A stretch of 64,000 nucleotides of DNA from Magallana gigas (GCF_963853765.1 NC_088853.1:14880001-14944000), one strand, 5' to 3'. Positions 21,168 through 63,069 are shown, numbered from the stretch's first letter. Numbers and translations are program-made. The notes: generated by a model not told the origin, from the sequence alone.

Positions 21168-21589
21168 CTATCTCCCCCCACCCCGAGGTCTTGGTCTAGG
21201 TAAACGACGAATCGGCCCAGTGTTGACAATGCCATCTCGTCTGCTTGTAGGATATTTCACTATTCTATCATCCCCTAAAAAATTCAATCAATCAATAAAA
21301 TATTTTATTACAGTCGTGTTTACGGACGATTTTTGAATACTTTGACTGATACAAATTTCTTTACATAGTCATATTAGGCACATGTACAAAAACACACTTT
21401 TCATCAAACAAATAGTAATATTTTACAATAACAAAGGAAAACATGACACGCCCCTTTGTATGGTTTAAAAGTACTTTTCTTACCTCCAGACTGTGTTAAC
21501 ACACTCCCTAAATTTCCTTCCACACAATTATGAGTCAGCAACATCCCCACAGAGAGCAGGAGTAAAACTTTGAACCGCCAAGTGATCAT
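21168..21589 (-). CDS. Cg-Prp-like proline/arginine-rich secreted peptide precursor (70 aa), P1
   Basis: Exon 1 21484-21589 (MITWRFKVLLLLSVGMLLTHNCVEG-NLGSVLTQSG, G|GTAAG). Exon 2 21168-21274 (ttttag|; GDDRIVKYPTSRRDGIVNTGPIRRLPRPRPRGGGR*, TAG followed by TGA). The TGPIRR.P.PRPR motif matches my recollection of oyster Cg-Prp. Confidence 0.85.
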
Positions 21590-22164
21590 GGCTGAAGGCT
21601 AGCGAACAAATGGAGATAGAACACTAAACAATGGCGATTTAACATCAGTTCATGTGACGAAAAATTCCCCCGAATATTTTATCACGAGCTGTACTTGTCA
21701 ACAGGAAAACGACACTAGGTCATCAGCAGCAGCGCTTTTTTTTCGATTTAAACTAGAGGAACTGTTGTCGATTGTGCACTCTATGGATTCATTAGAATTC
21801 GTTGTGTCTCAATTGTCGTAGTATTTTAGTGAAGTAGGTTCTTCCCCATCCTCGATGAAAACAAATTTTGAAAGAGTTAGTGTTCTTACAGTAACTAAAT
21901 CAAAGTACTGAAGTACTGACGGGAGTTGATTTTATCGATTATCATTTATTTTGAAATCAACTTATCTTGCATGGCAATTAGTTTCTAGTCTGTATTTGAA
22001 TTACGCACTTTTTTATAATATGAAGTTTTTACTTTGCCGACAAGAATTTCTAAAAAACCCATATGAATCATGTTGTAATAATGTTGTAATATTTAAAGAT
22101 AGATTTCAAACTATGGCAGTTCTAAAAATTGTATGGATCCAAGCACTTTTGATATCGAACTCTT

Positions 22165-22275
22165 AGTCTCGTTCAACAAGACGCTCGGCTGTCACCGTTA
22201 ATCTCCGACAAGCAAGAGAGTCTCTATGATTGTCGGAGATTTACGGAGACAGCCGAGCGTTTGGTTGGTTACTAT
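22165..22275. mobile_element. Short hairpin MITE (~110 bp)
   Basis: cgctcggctgtcaccgttaatctccgacaa ... ttgtcggagatttacggagacagccgagcg (30-bp inverted repeat). Confidence 0.75.
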
Positions 22276-24574
22276 GGCGTAAGAATACATGAGACTGTAA
22301 AAATATCTAAATTGTTTGTATGATGTAAAATCAAACTATTTACAAAGTGTGTGTTGATAAGTTTCCATGAAAAACAATGCTTCATATTTTTTCTATTATT
22401 TTCGAGAACTAAGTCTTGTAAGCGATGATGATTTGTGCTTAGATCCAAACACTGTTTCACTTTCGGTTTGCCAGAGTAACTGGATAGGAGAGTTGATTAA
22501 AATCAACTCACAAAAATGACGCATCCTTAAAATAATGTCCCCTAGAATAAGCTATAATCCACAAAAATAAGGAAAAAAACCATGAAATTTTGCTTCCATG
22601 AGATTTCAAATGATTCCACTGTTTATGAAAAAAAAACAGTTTAAGTAGAAATATCGAGTAGCGTTCCTGTTAATTGATTAATAACAATACAATTTGATTT
22701 GTTTTGCTAAAAATGCGAAAAAAAAAACCAGAACACTAAGTGTTCATTTAAGGTAGCTTTTCCCGTTTTAAATTTATCTGAAAAATACAAGTAACATTGC
22801 TTTTAATCAACTGAAAAACAACTCATGAAAAAGAAAATCACAAACAATCGTGATAAAATTAGATCAATTTAACAGTACAACTTATGCAAAATAATACTCT
22901 TATATATCCTTTTGACAAAAAATGTGTATTTTTATGGATGAGATGCAGTTAGATAGGTTGAACATCCAACGGGTTGTAAGCCTGGTCGACGTACGGAAAT
23001 GCTATATAAGCTATGTGGGCACTACAACTAGGTTCTGAAAAATGTTTTTCTGTCCATCTTGCTTTTCTGGTCTTTGCTAAACGTTTCAATCTCTCTCCCT
23101 TTGAAGGTTTACAAAACTATCTGTTCTATCGCGCCATTACTGCATCACCGGATATTAAGCTTGCCGTGTAAATTTCGAACCGAAACATGTCAATCCAGAA
23201 CAATATTCCGCATCAGTATCGGTTTTGACTTTTATAACTATTTATTACGTGGAGATACCCGTGAATTACTTTAAGCATAAACTGTATCTAAATATTTATA
23301 GCTTCAACCATCTATGTTTATAACCTAGACTAAAATGTCATTGTTTTAATGCTTTATACAAGTCACCATGCATTCTATATACACAATTTAATGTTATCCA
23401 TACCATCCAATCGGCTATGCGCAGTAAAAGTAAAGATGATAAAATAAAAAGCCGCCTCCAATTACACTGTAATAACTATTTTTTTTTTTTTAAATGAAAC
23501 CAATTCCGGTTTAGTTTGAGCACAAACATTTGCAAGAGACAATATATAAATATTTGACTATTTTATATAATTCAAGAATATGATTGAATTTATAAAAGGA
23601 TTTTCATATTTTTCGGTCTTCTTAAAACTAGATTGAAATGAACGTATATTATGTATGATGCAACTTCCTGGATGGTGCTGAGCCTGTTTGTCAACATGTG
23701 AAACCCACGTGTACTTGGGGGTAGGTATGTTTACTCTCAATTATCTCTCTTAGAAGCCGCATAAGGCGTTATTATTTTATTGAAATTTTTCTTGAAGCAG
23801 TTAACTAAAATTTCTCTTTCATCAATTATATGCTGAGAGTATTGTTAATTAATTAACTGAATTAAAACTATATAGTAACATATAGTGAAATTAATTCCTT
23901 GTGTGAGAACTTAAACTGGACTTGTTCCTGTGGAAGATATTCACTTTTTCTTTGCTATTTAAATATTTCTTTTGTTTGTTTTTGTTTGTTGTTGTTTTTT
24001 TTTCGTCAAAGTGAAATATCGAAAGTCACAGTAAGCGTAATTTTGAAACGGATTTATGTATAATTAACAAACGCAATGTGAAATCTCTGGTATATGACAT
24101 TATTGCATTCTGAAGGACCTGTGTTCGAAGTACCTTAGTAGAGACAGCACGTGTCCCTGATACAATAATACTCCTAAAACATTTATACGTTTGACTCAAG
24201 GACAAAGTTTAATAGGGCTACAGTAAGTTCAAAAATTTTTAAAGCACAATAGTTAAGGGCAAAGTTTTTTTTATAGATGTATAACTTTATGCACCATCGG
24301 TTTGTGATACAAGTGAAAGTGACATATACCAATAGTTGGTAAATGTGTTTGCTTATTAAAACAATACAGATTGTTAAGTGTTTAATTTTGAAAATAATAG
24401 TAATAAATCGAAATAATATTCGTAATTTTTCATTAAAAAAGGCAGTGTTCGGTGTTGATACGAATTCCTAGCATTTCATGTTTTCTTAATATCTTTTTTT
24501 AAAATGTCATGTACAAATAAATATTTTATATTTTTAACAGCAAATATTCTCGTTTTTCTTGTTGATCTTTTTAA

Positions 24575-24900
24575 GCAATAAAAAGATGGAGTAGTTTACG
24601 GTTTATAAACAGAGAAACTTTTTATAAAAAAGCGTTTACTGTTTCAAACCATTGTATATCGTATAAAACAAATAAATGTTGAATTCCTTGCTTATAATTT
24701 AATTTTTTTACTCTTCGTTGTAGATAAAAACGGTCATTTGACCTTTAAAATGACGTAAAATTATACAAAATTCAAATGTAACGTCAGGCGTATTAATACG
24801 TTTTTGACGTTATTTTTACTATGACGTAGGCAACAATCTTTACACGATATAAAATATTTTTTTAGCCAATCAGAAAGCGCGTTACAACCAGAATTAGATT
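24575..24900. mobile_element. ~350-bp non-autonomous repeat with long terminal palindrome (degenerate copy)
   Basis: Ends ...agccaatcagaaagcgcgttacaaccagaatta; other copies at 31858-32219 (inverted) and 46750-47108. Confidence 0.7.
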
Positions 24901-25094
24901 ATTTATTGATAAATATAAAATCGAACTAAAAAAAATGAAAACTTAAGACACGAATTGCCAAATAAGCTTTAAGTATACATAGTTATTCACGAACAAGAGA
25001 CTATAACCCACAGTCATAAAATAAGGTATGTTCTGAAGTGTATTGCCGACTGTGTCCAAATTGATCTCTAGATGAAGTCCAACATCCAAAAAAA

Positions 25095-61280: not shown

Positions 61281-61318
61281 ATTAATTGGTTAATTTAACA
61301 CATGAACTAATAAATTAT

Positions 61319-61324
<6 letters not shown>

Positions 61325-61406
<82 letters not shown>
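61325..61406. repeat. (AT)n microsatellite
   Basis: About 40 AT units. Confidence 0.98.
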
Positions 61407-61409
<3 letters not shown>

Positions 61410-62948
61410 CCTGCTTAGTGACCCCGAAATAAAACATTCAAGTGTATACAAATACATAAAAACAGAAAACAATGTAAAACTCAAATTTTTTTGGCGATCT
61501 GCAAACAGCATTTATTCTTCTGGCTAATTATCAGCCCGAATGAAAACATCCTTTGTATTGTCTTGATGTAAACAGCTACCTCGTAAGATAAAATTTCTAA
61601 AAACGAAACTATGTTGCTACGTTAATTATTTTTCTTTTTCGCAAGTATAAATTTAAGTGATTTTGTCTTTAAATTATTTCTTTAACCTACAAATGGTTTT
61701 GTGAGAACGACTTTGAAATTCGTACGAAAATATCTTAAGAATTAACTTACGAATTGTTGTAAAAAGGACTACAGAATTTTAATTCATTCATAGAAACAAC
61801 TAACCTTTGGAACCATTTCATTTATTCCGAGTGCAGCAAGAAGTTTAATGGCGAGACTTAATGGTAACACGTATATATAAGAAAAATATTTAAAATAAAA
61901 GATGAATCTGGGGTACATGTACCAAGTGCTGAAAATATTCTCCCAGATCCTTGAGGCTGCTATAGTGGCCGCCATTTTGTCTGACAAAGTTAATTTATTC
62001 ACTATATGAATGAGGATTTTCGATGTTTATTAACTGTCCATTAACTCTATCAAAAGTTGTTCATTAACGTTATCACAAACAGTTCGATGTTGCAATCGAA
62101 AATATTGAAAACATTTGCTATGAAAACCAGTTAGTTTTCATCAGTGTTTTAATCAGTAGATAAAACTAGTTTCACGTATGTCTTATCAACTTATTTAGAT
62201 GTAAAATAAAAACATTAACACCAATTAAGGAACCGATCTTTTATATTTTGGATAAAGTATTCAGAGAAAGCATTGAAAGAAGAAATGAAAAAAATCTCGA
62301 AATCACGCACGTTTATTTCTGAAGACACAAATGTTACGTATTACGTATAAGCCATTACGTCAGTATAAAGACTGAGCACGCGACGTTTTGGTATTAACTT
62401 TAGCTTATGATTTCTGTAATCAGGTGGATCCCATGTCTGTGTTTCAAACCATAAAATCTGCGCTCGGCCCAACGGTCACGACGTTTACATAATAAAGTTA
62501 TTTTAAATAAAAAAACGTCCTATGGAAGAAAACAATTTGTTTATATAAAAGTTTTCATTACACTGCAATCACATGCACATTAATATTCTTGACACATTTT
62601 TTTAATTCTTCAAACGTTCAGACTTATTCAAGTATGTTATGTAAGATTGCAAGTCGGTTAATTGGTTCTCTAAATAACTAAAGTAGTAATAATAAAGGTC
62701 GTTCAATTTTATTATTTGCATGGTTAGTGTATTTGTCATTGAAATGTAAGAGCAATTCAGAAAATATTTATTGTTCATTTTAACCGGTTTATTTTGTAAC
62801 AAAATTAAAAAAAAATAGATTAACAATTTGGTACGTGTTTTTTTTTTCCAAATAATTGTTCATTTTAACCGATTCATTTTATAGGAAAGGTAAAAAAAAA
62901 ATCGGGTAAAAAATTTGGTACAATTCTTTTTCGTTAATAAAAACCTAC

Positions 62949-63069
62949 CTCTCTTTTTTCTTAACAGTTTTCGCACGCTACTGAAATGTCCGAGTTTTCC
63001 TTCAACTTCGGAGATAGTCAGCAAAATCCCCGCAACAAGCAAAAGAACGAAAAACGTCTGACGATTCAT
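62949..63069 (-). CDS. Signal-peptide exon of peptide precursor P9 with Lys/Arg-rich N-terminal mature segment; exon 2 uncertain
   Basis: MNRQTFFVLLLVAGILLTISEVEG-KLGHFSSVRKLLRKKR then G|GTAGG (phase 1, same architecture as P1-P7). Candidate exon 2 at 62503-62519 (GRFFI*) or at the acceptor near 62672 (ENQLTDLQSY...). Confidence 0.7.

What the first reader, a model, noticed from the sequence alone, without database searches (positions are those of the whole stretch)
21168..63069. Expanded cluster of small secreted peptide genes sharing one exon-1 design but with very different mature peptides (extended Cg-Prp-like family)
Seen: 11 gene models (P1-P7, P2', P3', P4', P7') plus the P9 signal exon, all on the minus strand. 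Each has exon 1 = hydrophobic signal ending V/A-E/D-G plus 8-16 residues, a phase-1 intron, and a short exon 2. The mature parts fall into at least four classes: Pro/Arg tail (TGPIRRLPRPRPR, GPIRRTRRPRP), Arg/Gly-rich long (P2), Tyr/His-rich (P3) and Lys/Arg-rich (P9). Established, from memory: oyster Cg-Prp is a two-exon hemocyte precursor with a signal ending VEG, an acidic N-part and a ...DTGPIRRPKPRPRPRPEG tail, reported to act in synergy with defensin. Inference: this is a birth-and-death array of host-defence (or other secreted) peptides, broader than the described Cg-Prp. It is invisible to unspliced ORF calling and may be missed by annotation because each CDS is only 130-270 nt.
Basis: partly seen in the sequence, partly recalled or inferred. 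Interest (0 to 1): 0.85.

Follow-up and report, generated by a model that had tools for sequence, protein, structure and literature searches.

The report
Oyster Cg-Prp-like secreted peptide gene cluster
This stretch of Pacific oyster DNA holds a real, transcribed cluster of small secreted-peptide genes related to the known oyster antimicrobial peptide Cg-Prp, but it is less varied than first thought and most of it is already annotated, without a name.

Summary
The observation mostly holds. The minus strand between 21168 and 63069 carries 12 homologous signal-peptide exons. All end in V/A-E/D-G plus 8-16 residues and stop at a phase-1 GT donor.

Eight are complete two-exon genes:
- P1 (70 aa)
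- five 66-aa genes (D, F, G, J, K)
- two 88-aa genes (B, H)

Public RNA confirms the predicted junction for P1, B, H and D. The three kinds align over both exons. They share a core, G-I-F/V..GP..RR..RP, that matches the active end of Cg-Prp (hhalign E 2e-5). The 66-aa genes also have the 103-nt first exon published for Cg-prp.

The claim of "very different mature peptides" is overstated. The Tyr/His class (C, I, E) consists of truncated 5' gene copies, and its supposed exon 2 is sequence homologous to B's intron. P9 (L) is an exon 1 whose matching terminal exon (46711-46511) lies 16 kb away, across a duplicated block.

The "primed" genes lie in a 95-98% identical second copy. That copy could be a true duplication or an assembly artefact.

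Annotation already covers most classes as "uncharacterized". J equals UniProt K1RFY3 exactly. No searchable paper links these genes to Cg-Prp. Antimicrobial function is inferred, not tested.

The parts
21168..21589 (-). Gene P1, 70 aa. Exon 1 CDS 21589-21484, intron 209 nt, exon 2 CDS 21274-21168. Tail ..TGPIRRLPRPRPRGGGR.
   Evidence: Splice model. Intron-less transcript contigs L001 and L002 jump 21483>21276 at 97-98% identity. L001 comes from a C. gigas gill RNA-seq run.
25095..25884 (-). Gene B, 88 aa. Exon 1 25884-25788, intron 523 nt, exon 2 25264-25095.
   Evidence: Model. Joint 25264>25788 (CT..AC on +) at depth 2132 in run X3, with zero depth over the intron bins at 25280-25679.
26958..27126 (-). 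Relic C: an exon-1-like fragment that has lost the ancestral ATG and uses a fortuitous upstream ATG. It has no homologous exon 2.
   Evidence: Only unspliced low-depth contigs.
28262..28974 (-). Gene D, 66 aa. Exon 1 28974-28872 (103 nt), intron 512 nt, exon 2 28359-28262. TATA-like box at about 29026 and a polyA signal at about 27884.
   Evidence: Joint 28359>28872 at depth 7589 in X3, plus 2 raw reads in X22. The 3'UTR bins reach depth of about 38000.
31620..31722 (-). Relic E: an intact-looking exon 1 (103 nt) followed only by a piece homologous to B's intron.
   Evidence: Expression not tested.
33303..33984 (-). Gene F, 66 aa. Exon 1 33984-33882, intron 481 nt, exon 2 33400-33303. Tail GVGGPIRRTRRPRP.
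   Evidence: One residue different from UniProt K1RAA1.
36339..37042 (-). Gene G, 66 aa. Exon 1 37042-36940, intron 503 nt, exon 2 36436-36339.
46511..46711 (-). L-type terminal exon with a phase-1 acceptor (ttttatattacag) and an AATAAA downstream. It lies in the 1.4-kb spacer between the two duplicated blocks.
   Evidence: tblastn of P0026 residues 41-71 gave 58% identity, E 5e-8. Sequence read.
47302..48104 (-). Gene H, 88 aa (copy-2 twin of B). Exon 1 48104-48008, intron 536 nt, exon 2 47471-47302.
   Evidence: Transcript contig L005 is 99% identical and jumps 48005>47473. Its product P0013 is identical to the model.
49190..49356 (-). Relic I (copy-2 twin of C). Frameshifted, donor context changed.
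50525..51228 (-). Gene J, 66 aa (copy-2 twin of D). Exon 1 51228-51126, intron 503 nt, exon 2 50622-50525.
   Evidence: Product identical to UniProt K1RFY3.
53706..54325 (-). Gene K, 66 aa (copy-2 twin of G). Exon 1 54325-54223, intron 419 nt, exon 2 53803-53706.
62949..63069 (-). Signal ..SEVEG plus a Lys/Arg-rich 16-mer, donor GAG|GTAGGT, and a TATA-like box about 55 nt upstream.
   Evidence: 87.5% identical to the exon-1 part of A0A8W8MXG4. No exon 2 within 1.5 kb.
24587..45351 (.). Duplicated block, copy 1 (B, C, D, E, F, G and spacers).
   Evidence: Self-BLAST gave 95-98% identity to copy 2. Boundaries examined.
46798..62765 (.). Duplicated block, copy 2 (H, I, J, K and spacers). It lacks the E/F unit, or hides it in the gap at 51733-51892.

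Best explanation
The window is from the Pacific oyster (Magallana/Crassostrea gigas). It carries a tandem cluster of genes for small prepropeptides that are paralogues of the proline-rich hemocyte peptide Cg-Prp.

Each intact gene has a TATA-type promoter and two coding exons. Exon 1 encodes a 24-25-residue signal peptide, cleaved after V/A-E/D-G, plus the first 8-10 residues of a pro-region. A phase-1 intron of 0.2-0.55 kb follows. Exon 2 encodes the rest of the pro-region, a conserved G-I-F/V junction and a short Arg/Pro-rich cationic tail.

Shown here:
- the anatomy of the genes
- their homology to each other
- transcription and exact splicing of P1, B, H and D
- duplication, and decay in the form of three truncated 5' copies and one split gene

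Inferred:
- The precursor enters the secretory or granule pathway.
- It is cut near the conserved aromatic junction, as proposed for Cg-Prp.
- The cationic tail acts as a weak antimicrobial that works mainly in synergy with defensins or BPI.

The cluster grows by unit duplication. In the 66-aa paralogues exon 2 diverges faster than the non-coding sequence around it.
For: - Species: predicted proteins are 97-100% identical to M. gigas UniProt entries.
- Homology among members: the nucleotide alignment of 12 first exons has conserved blocks. The protein alignment A1 has 13 invariant columns spread over both exons.
- Link to Cg-Prp, sequence: the published 37-mer (PMC11678341, PMC7736402) aligns to the family profile with E 2.3e-5 and 57% identity over 21 columns. 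The match covers ..GSIFDTGPIRRPKPRPRP.
[quoted passage not shown] The 66-aa genes have a 103-nt exon 1 and introns of 419-512 nt.
- Transcription and splicing.
- Signal-peptide features: a basic N-terminal stretch, a hydrophobic core with a Kyte-Doolittle 10-residue mean of 2.6-3.3, and V/A at -3 with G at -1.
- Tail charge is +4 to +6.
- Faster change in exon 2: 79-84% identity, against 85-87% for the intron and 89-93% for the 3'UTR. Between species the 3'UTR still aligns at about 80% while the exon-2 CDS does not.
Against: - No functional, peptidomic or tissue-resolved data were available.
- Tails of the 66-aa genes are only 14-21% proline, below the 25% used to define proline-rich AMPs. The 88-aa type has no strict Pro-Arg-Pro motif.
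- Pro-regions are about neutral rather than anionic.
- Overall pN is about equal to pS (0.11-0.15). That fits relaxed constraint as well as diversifying selection.
- The profile search of 1.8 billion representatives did not return canonical Cg-Prp among its 20 hits. The link therefore rests on one short alignment plus gene structure.
- I could not obtain the Cg-Prp signal peptide or intron to compare.
- Two polyA RNA-seq runs sampled at about 1 in 100 showed almost no reads on these genes, so expression depends on tissue or condition.
Confidence: 0.7

Rival explanations
1. The genes are real and related to Cg-Prp, but their products are signalling peptides such as neuropeptides, hormones or cytokine-like factors. 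They would be released at dibasic sites and would not act as antimicrobial effectors.
For: RR and KR pairs sit in the pro-region and tail of every member. P1 ends in ..GGGR, which could be trimmed and amidated. Cg-Prp itself is barely active alone (PMC3390580).
Against: Variable copy number, truncated relics, fast-changing coding sequence and pN close to pS are typical of immune effectors and unusual for conserved neuropeptides. Contig depth in one RNA run is very high, up to about 38000. The only relative with experimental data is an antimicrobial synergist.
Confidence: 0.12
2. The second block (46798-62765, genes H, I, J, K) is not a separate locus. It is the other haplotype, or a mis-joined contig, of the first block. 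The true cluster would then have about five intact genes, and L would be an ordinary gene with a short intron.
For: The blocks are collinear and 95-98% identical, which is within the range I would expect for oyster allelic divergence (my own knowledge). Both N gaps fall inside the blocks at microsatellites. L exon 1 and the only L-type terminal exon flank copy 2 exactly. Removing copy 2 would leave an intron of about 270 nt.
Against: The block boundaries (46797/46798 and 62765/62766) are continuous sequence without N. UniProt lists two slightly different D-type and two slightly different F-type A0A8W8 entries for M. gigas. Published qPCR finds 4-18 Cg-prp copies per oyster, so copy variation is normal for this family.
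Confidence: 0.3
3. The truncated copies C and E are not dead. They have recruited former intron sequence as a new terminal exon, giving Tyr/His-rich or other novel peptides.
For: In C, an AG followed by an open phase-1 frame gives ..VVVLDEYRNTYYFYYWPYTGRYRHHFNHI. E keeps its ATG and a good donor.
Against: The sequence is homologous to the part of B's intron that is spliced out. The frame differs between B, C and E. C has lost the family ATG, and its twin I is frameshifted at 96% identity. RNA contigs over C are low-depth and unspliced.
Confidence: 0.07

Closest known systems
[quoted passage not shown]
   Same: Same species. Same precursor plan of signal, pro-region and short cationic Arg/Pro tail. 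Same two-exon gene with the intron in the pro-region, and a 103-nt exon 1 in the 66-aa genes. Shared core ..G-(S/I)-I/F-x-x-GP-I-R-R..P-R-P. Both are multicopy with indel variants in the tail.
   Different: The Cg-prp primers (the forward one begins CACCATGTTCTCTCGG, i.e. MFSRR..) are absent from the window. These are therefore paralogues, not Cg-prp itself. Tails are shorter and poorer in proline, pro-regions are not anionic, and the 88-aa type adds a 20-residue C-terminal extension. No activity data exist.
M. gigas UniProt entries K1RFY3, K1RAA1, A0A8W8NVC4, A0A8W8MV56, A0A8W8MXI8, A0A8W8NSB3, A0A8W8MX90, A0A8W8NVB9, A0A8W8MXG4 and A0A8W8NZU4
   Same: These are gene models of the same genes or their alleles. 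J is identical to K1RFY3, and F differs from K1RAA1 by one residue.
   Different: They are named only "Uncharacterized protein" or "Secreted protein", they match no Pfam family, and nothing links them to Cg-Prp. The P1 type is absent from them.
Proline-rich antimicrobial peptides of insects and crustaceans (drosocin, metalnikowin, astacidin) and mussel myticalins
   Same: Short cationic Arg/Pro peptides with PRP motifs, cut from secreted precursors. Multigene and fast-evolving in the case of myticalins.
   Different: No demonstrable homology. Proline content here is lower. Whether these peptides target the ribosome or DnaK was not tested.

Membership tests
Cg-Prp family | Precursor of a 24-residue signal peptide, a pro-region of about 19 residues (anionic) and a 16-18-residue cationic tail (PMC3390580) | tested here: inconclusive
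   Signal of 24-25 aa and cationic tails of 14-18 aa (35 aa in B/H) are present. The pro-region is 27-29 aa with net charge -2 to +1, so it is not clearly anionic.
Cg-Prp family | Two-exon gene with a 103-bp exon 1 (signal plus half of the pro-domain) and a GT/AG intron in the pro-region (PMC2823732) | tested here: met
   D, F, G, J and K have a 103-nt exon 1 and GT/AG introns of 419-512 nt. P1 has 106 nt and B/H 97 nt. All are phase 1. It is not certain that the published 103 bp counts from the ATG.
Cg-Prp family | Sequence similarity to the Cg-Prp mature region (..EGSIFDTGPIRRPKPRPRPRPEG) | tested here: met
   hhalign of the 37-mer against the family alignment gave E 2.3e-5, probability 76%, 57% identity over 21 columns. 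The match is short, and the signal peptide could not be compared.
Cg-Prp family | Pro-Arg-Pro motif(s) in the tail | tested here: inconclusive
   P1 has PRPRPR. The 66-aa genes have one PRP, except J, which ends RPRS. B and H have none (PRFP, RRPGRR).
Cg-Prp family | Expression in hemocytes, with storage in granules | not testable with these tools
   Spliced transcripts exist. One source run is gill tissue. There is no cell-type information.
Cg-Prp family | Antimicrobial synergy with Cg-Defs or Cg-BPI | not testable with these tools
   This needs synthetic peptides and checkerboard assays.
Proline-rich AMPs (PrAMP, as defined in PMC7736402) | At least 25% proline, PRP motifs, and an intracellular target (70S ribosome or DnaK) | tested here: not met
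   Tail proline is 12-21%. The target was not tested. Full-length Cg-Prp itself fails the 25% rule according to that paper.

The most novel reading that the evidence does not exclude
Cg-Prp is only one branch of a larger oyster-lineage superfamily of prepropeptides. Its members keep a common signal exon and promoter while exon 2 is remodelled by point change, tail indels, C-terminal extension, truncation and possibly exon capture. In this reading the L-type gene stays active although a 16-kb block with four or five same-strand family genes now sits in its intron, or the stranded L-type terminal exon is used as an alternative 3' exon by the neighbouring gene H.
Probability: 0.1. Interest if true: 0.7.

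Novelty: new member of a known kind. Interest (0 to 1): 0.42.

Why it matters
Cg-Prp has been treated as a single small family known from cDNA and qPCR copy counts. I found no paper in the searchable library that places it in the genome or names relatives.

Four further subtypes (P1, 66-aa, 88-aa and L) share its gene plan and active core. At least three of them are transcribed, one at very high contig depth. That gives oyster immunologists a concrete set of candidate effectors to test. Uses include testing synergy with defensins and BPI, testing association with resistance to Vibrio and to summer mortality, and studying copy-number variation.

It also explains a set of "uncharacterized" oyster proteins that have sat in UniProt since the first C. 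gigas genome annotation (K1R... entries; 2012 by my own knowledge).

The gain is incremental. The kind of molecule and its mode of evolution are already known.

Tried and rejected
- Canonical Cg-prp primers (PCR and qPCR) searched in the window with up to 3 mismatches gave no match. Cg-prp proper is not here.
- Pfam scan of four family proteins and five neighbouring ORFs found nothing above a curated cut-off. ESM Atlas look-ups of P0001 and of the Pro/Tyr ORF gave only low-score, uninformative hits.
- The look-up of encoding contigs for the UniRef-only proteins P0006, P0026, P0038 and P0014 returned "not on record". I could not see how the reference assembly arranges these genes or how long the L-type intron is there.
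- The raw polyA RNA-seq runs X21 and X22 gave almost no coverage of the genes. Most of their laid reads were partial matches at repeats. The splice evidence therefore comes mainly from Logan contigs.
- Looking up source-run accessions in papers identified only one, SRR27190592, a C. gigas gill run. The species of the more distant relatives (L003, L004, L006-L009, 73-88% nucleotide identity) stays unknown.
- I searched papers for the tail strings and for recent mentions of Cg-Prp. No paper holds these peptides or describes a genomic Cg-Prp cluster.
- I rejected the idea that one signal exon serves several terminal exons. B and H transcripts use only the 25264/47471 acceptor.
- I did not type the full set of predicted proteins into the exact-match tools, in order to avoid long typed input.

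
Full report
**What is in the sequence**

ORF listing and reading of the minus strand show 12 short open frames. Each starts with a basic N-terminal stretch and a hydrophobic core and ends in V/A-E/D-G. For each I located a GT donor that leaves one base of a split codon (phase 1). 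Exon-1 coding lengths are:
- 106 nt for P1
- 97 nt for B and H
- 103 nt for D, F, G, J, K and E
- 121 nt for L

A nucleotide alignment of the 12 exons with 90 nt of upstream sequence shows conserved blocks through the signal-coding part. It also shows a TATA-like box about 55 nt before the ATG in most copies. The resemblance is therefore common descent. The finding's limits, 21168 and 63069, are exactly the last coding base of P1 and the ATG of L.

**Gene models**

A regex and six-frame scan found eight terminal exons, all on the minus strand, that encode G-I-F/V..G-P/L/T..R-R..R-P. Each follows its exon 1 at 209-536 nt with an AG acceptor in the right phase. The products are:
- P1, 70 aa
- D, F, G, J and K, 66 aa each
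- B and H, 88 aa each

The 66-aa genes have signal peptides of 24 residues, pro-regions of 28 residues and tails of 14 residues with charge +4 to +5. B and H have a 35-residue tail with charge +6.

**Transcription and splicing**

A protein search with the spliced P1 product returned only transcript-derived proteins that read straight across the predicted junction. Their contigs L001 and L002 align to the window at 97-98% identity. They skip 21482-21277, which is the predicted intron. L001 comes from SRR27190592, a C. gigas gill RNA-seq run.

For H, contig L005 is 99% identical and skips the predicted intron. Its product is identical to my model.

I laid four runs on 23480-29470. Run X3 gave these joints:
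- 25264>25788 (gene B, depth 2132)
- 28359>28872 (gene D, depth 7589, plus two raw reads in X22)

Both joints have CT..AC ends on the + strand, which is GT..AG on the coding strand. Depth over B's intron bins at 25280-25679 was zero, so X3 behaves as RNA. A second B-type joint carried 30 replaced letters that encode the ..DGMGFIHNTRK.. variant of UniProt A0A8W8NVB9. Depth over D's exon 2 and 3'UTR reached about 38000 and dropped near the AATAAA at about 27884.

Two polyA raw-read runs, sampled at about 1 in 100, had almost nothing on these genes. Expression is therefore not ubiquitous.

**Relation between the classes and to Cg-Prp**

The P1, 66-aa and 88-aa proteins align over their whole length with 13 invariant columns in both exons. 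They are one family, not one signal exon joined to unrelated peptides.

The published Cg-Prp 37-mer (PMC11678341, PMC7736402) aligns to this family profile at E 2.3e-5. The match covers ..REGSIFDTGPIRRPKPRPRP against ..R-x-NGIFGVGGPIRRT-RRPRP. [quoted passage not shown]

Schmitt et al. (PMC2823732) report Cg-prp as a multicopy two-exon gene. [quoted passage not shown] The 66-aa genes here have the same exon-1 length and split point.

The Cg-prp primers are absent from the window. These are therefore paralogues.

The profile search of 1.8 billion representatives found 20 proteins. They include:
- further M. gigas members (A0A8W8NZU4, and A0A8W8MXG4 = P0026)
- more distant transcript-derived relatives of unknown species

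It did not find canonical Cg-Prp. No Pfam family matches.

**The classes that do not hold**

C, I and E share B's exon 1 and about 330 nt of B's intron. Homology then stops at B 25381-25394, before exon 2. They are truncated 5' copies.

The Tyr/His-rich "exon 2" of C lies in the intron-homologous stretch, which B demonstrably splices out. C and I lack the family ATG, and I is frameshifted relative to C although the two are 96% identical. RNA contigs over C are low-depth and unspliced. E could not be tested with reads.

The Lys/Arg-rich stretch of L (P9) is the exon-1-encoded start of its pro-region. UniProt A0A8W8MXG4 shows that L-type genes have a family-like exon 2 (..NNGFPENRQSGLRLGP..).

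The only match to that exon in the window is at 46711-46511 (58% identity, good acceptor, phase 1). That is 16.2 kb downstream of L exon 1. It lies in the 1.4-kb spacer between the two duplicated blocks.

**Duplication, gaps and assembly**

Self-comparison shows block 24587-45351 repeated at 46798-62765 with 95-98% identity.

Older unit duplications at 82-92% identity gave D, F and G.

Both N runs fall inside the blocks, away from any coding exon. Each lies where the other copy has an (AT)~40 microsatellite. Across gap 2 the flanks match different units of copy 1. The E/F unit is therefore either missing from copy 2 or hidden in the gap.

L exon 1 and the L-type terminal exon flank copy 2 exactly. 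Either the block was inserted into L's intron, or the assembly has placed a second haplotype in tandem. I could not decide between these.

The boundaries themselves are continuous sequence. The downstream boundary starts with a palindromic MITE-like element.

**Mode of evolution**

Between D, F and G (and between J and K), identities are:
- exon-2 CDS 79-84%
- intron 85-87%
- exon 1 90-93%
- 3'UTR 89-93%

Non-synonymous divergence in the pro-region (0.23-0.27) exceeds intron divergence (about 0.13-0.15). The signal and the tail are conserved, and overall pN is about equal to pS. Counts are small.

The pattern fits either diversifying selection or relaxed constraint on the pro-region, with the signal and the cationic tail kept. 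Across species the 3'UTR still aligns at about 80% while the exon-2 CDS does not.

**Annotation and literature**

- J's product is identical to UniProt K1RFY3, and F differs from K1RAA1 by one residue.
- Entries with A0A8W8... accessions cover the D, F, G/F, B and L types.
- All are "Uncharacterized" or "Secreted protein".
- The P1 type had no UniRef protein.

Searches for the tail strings, for Cg-Prp with genome or tandem, and for all Cg-Prp mentions since 2019 found no paper describing these genes or a genomic Cg-Prp cluster. The library does not hold most subscription journals.

**Verdict**

This is a real, expressed, Cg-Prp-related gene cluster. I count it as new subtypes of a known peptide family. 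Its diversity is narrower than claimed, part of its copy number is uncertain, and its function is inferred only from homology.

The scan's other notes on this window were tested here:
- s1-399444 (Tyr/His frame) is not supported as a shifted exon frame. The sequence is homologous to B's intron.
- s1-399443 (several terminal exons): I found the terminal exon at 46711-46511, at the lower limit of its span. Transcripts showed only one acceptor in use.

Noticed in passing
window 31086-31383, 39794-40198, 57079-57475 (+ strand): A Pro/Tyr/Gln-rich ORF of up to 134 aa recurs once per repeat unit on the opposite strand. It has no Pfam hit and no useful Atlas lead. It could be a separate small gene or part of a repeat element.
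   Followed up: partly
window 46511-46711 (-) and 62949-63069 (-): The two halves of an L-type family gene lie 16.2 kb apart, exactly on either side of duplicated block 2. This reflects either an insertion into the intron or an assembly artefact.
   Followed up: partly
window 24587-24650 and 46798-46860: The downstream end of each duplicated block begins with a palindromic element of about 60 nt (..CAGTTTACGC..GCGTAAACTG..). It resembles a MITE and may have mediated the duplication.
   Followed up: no
window 62770-62931: An 85-nt unit repeated 1.9 times lies directly after L exon 1.
   Followed up: no
window 1-3927: Offset self-matches spaced about 262-265 nt apart, with alternating 96-98% and 77% identity, suggest a long tandem array, possibly a higher-order repeat. 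It lies outside the finding.
   Followed up: no
window 42148-42656 and 59454-59969: Overlapping ORFs on both strands are built from 35-nt and 127-nt tandem units (..CCRNIAAI../..LLQQYC..). This looks like repeat DNA and not a gene. The one ORF tested there (42255-42656, minus strand) has no Pfam hit.
   Followed up: partly
UniProt A0A8W8MX90 (P0007): This 79-aa reference model joins a G-type exon 1 and the first 13 residues of a G-type exon 2 to a complete F-type exon 2. It is either a recombinant gene or a chimeric gene model across neighbouring units.
   Followed up: no
L001 (P0002) versus window 21168-21274: A P1-type transcript from gill encodes a longer tail, ..GPIRRFPRPIPRVIFLRPIPRSGRR. 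Exon 2 is 94% identical to the window while exon 1 is 97% identical. This resembles the long and short tail variation reported for Cg-Prp.
   Followed up: partly
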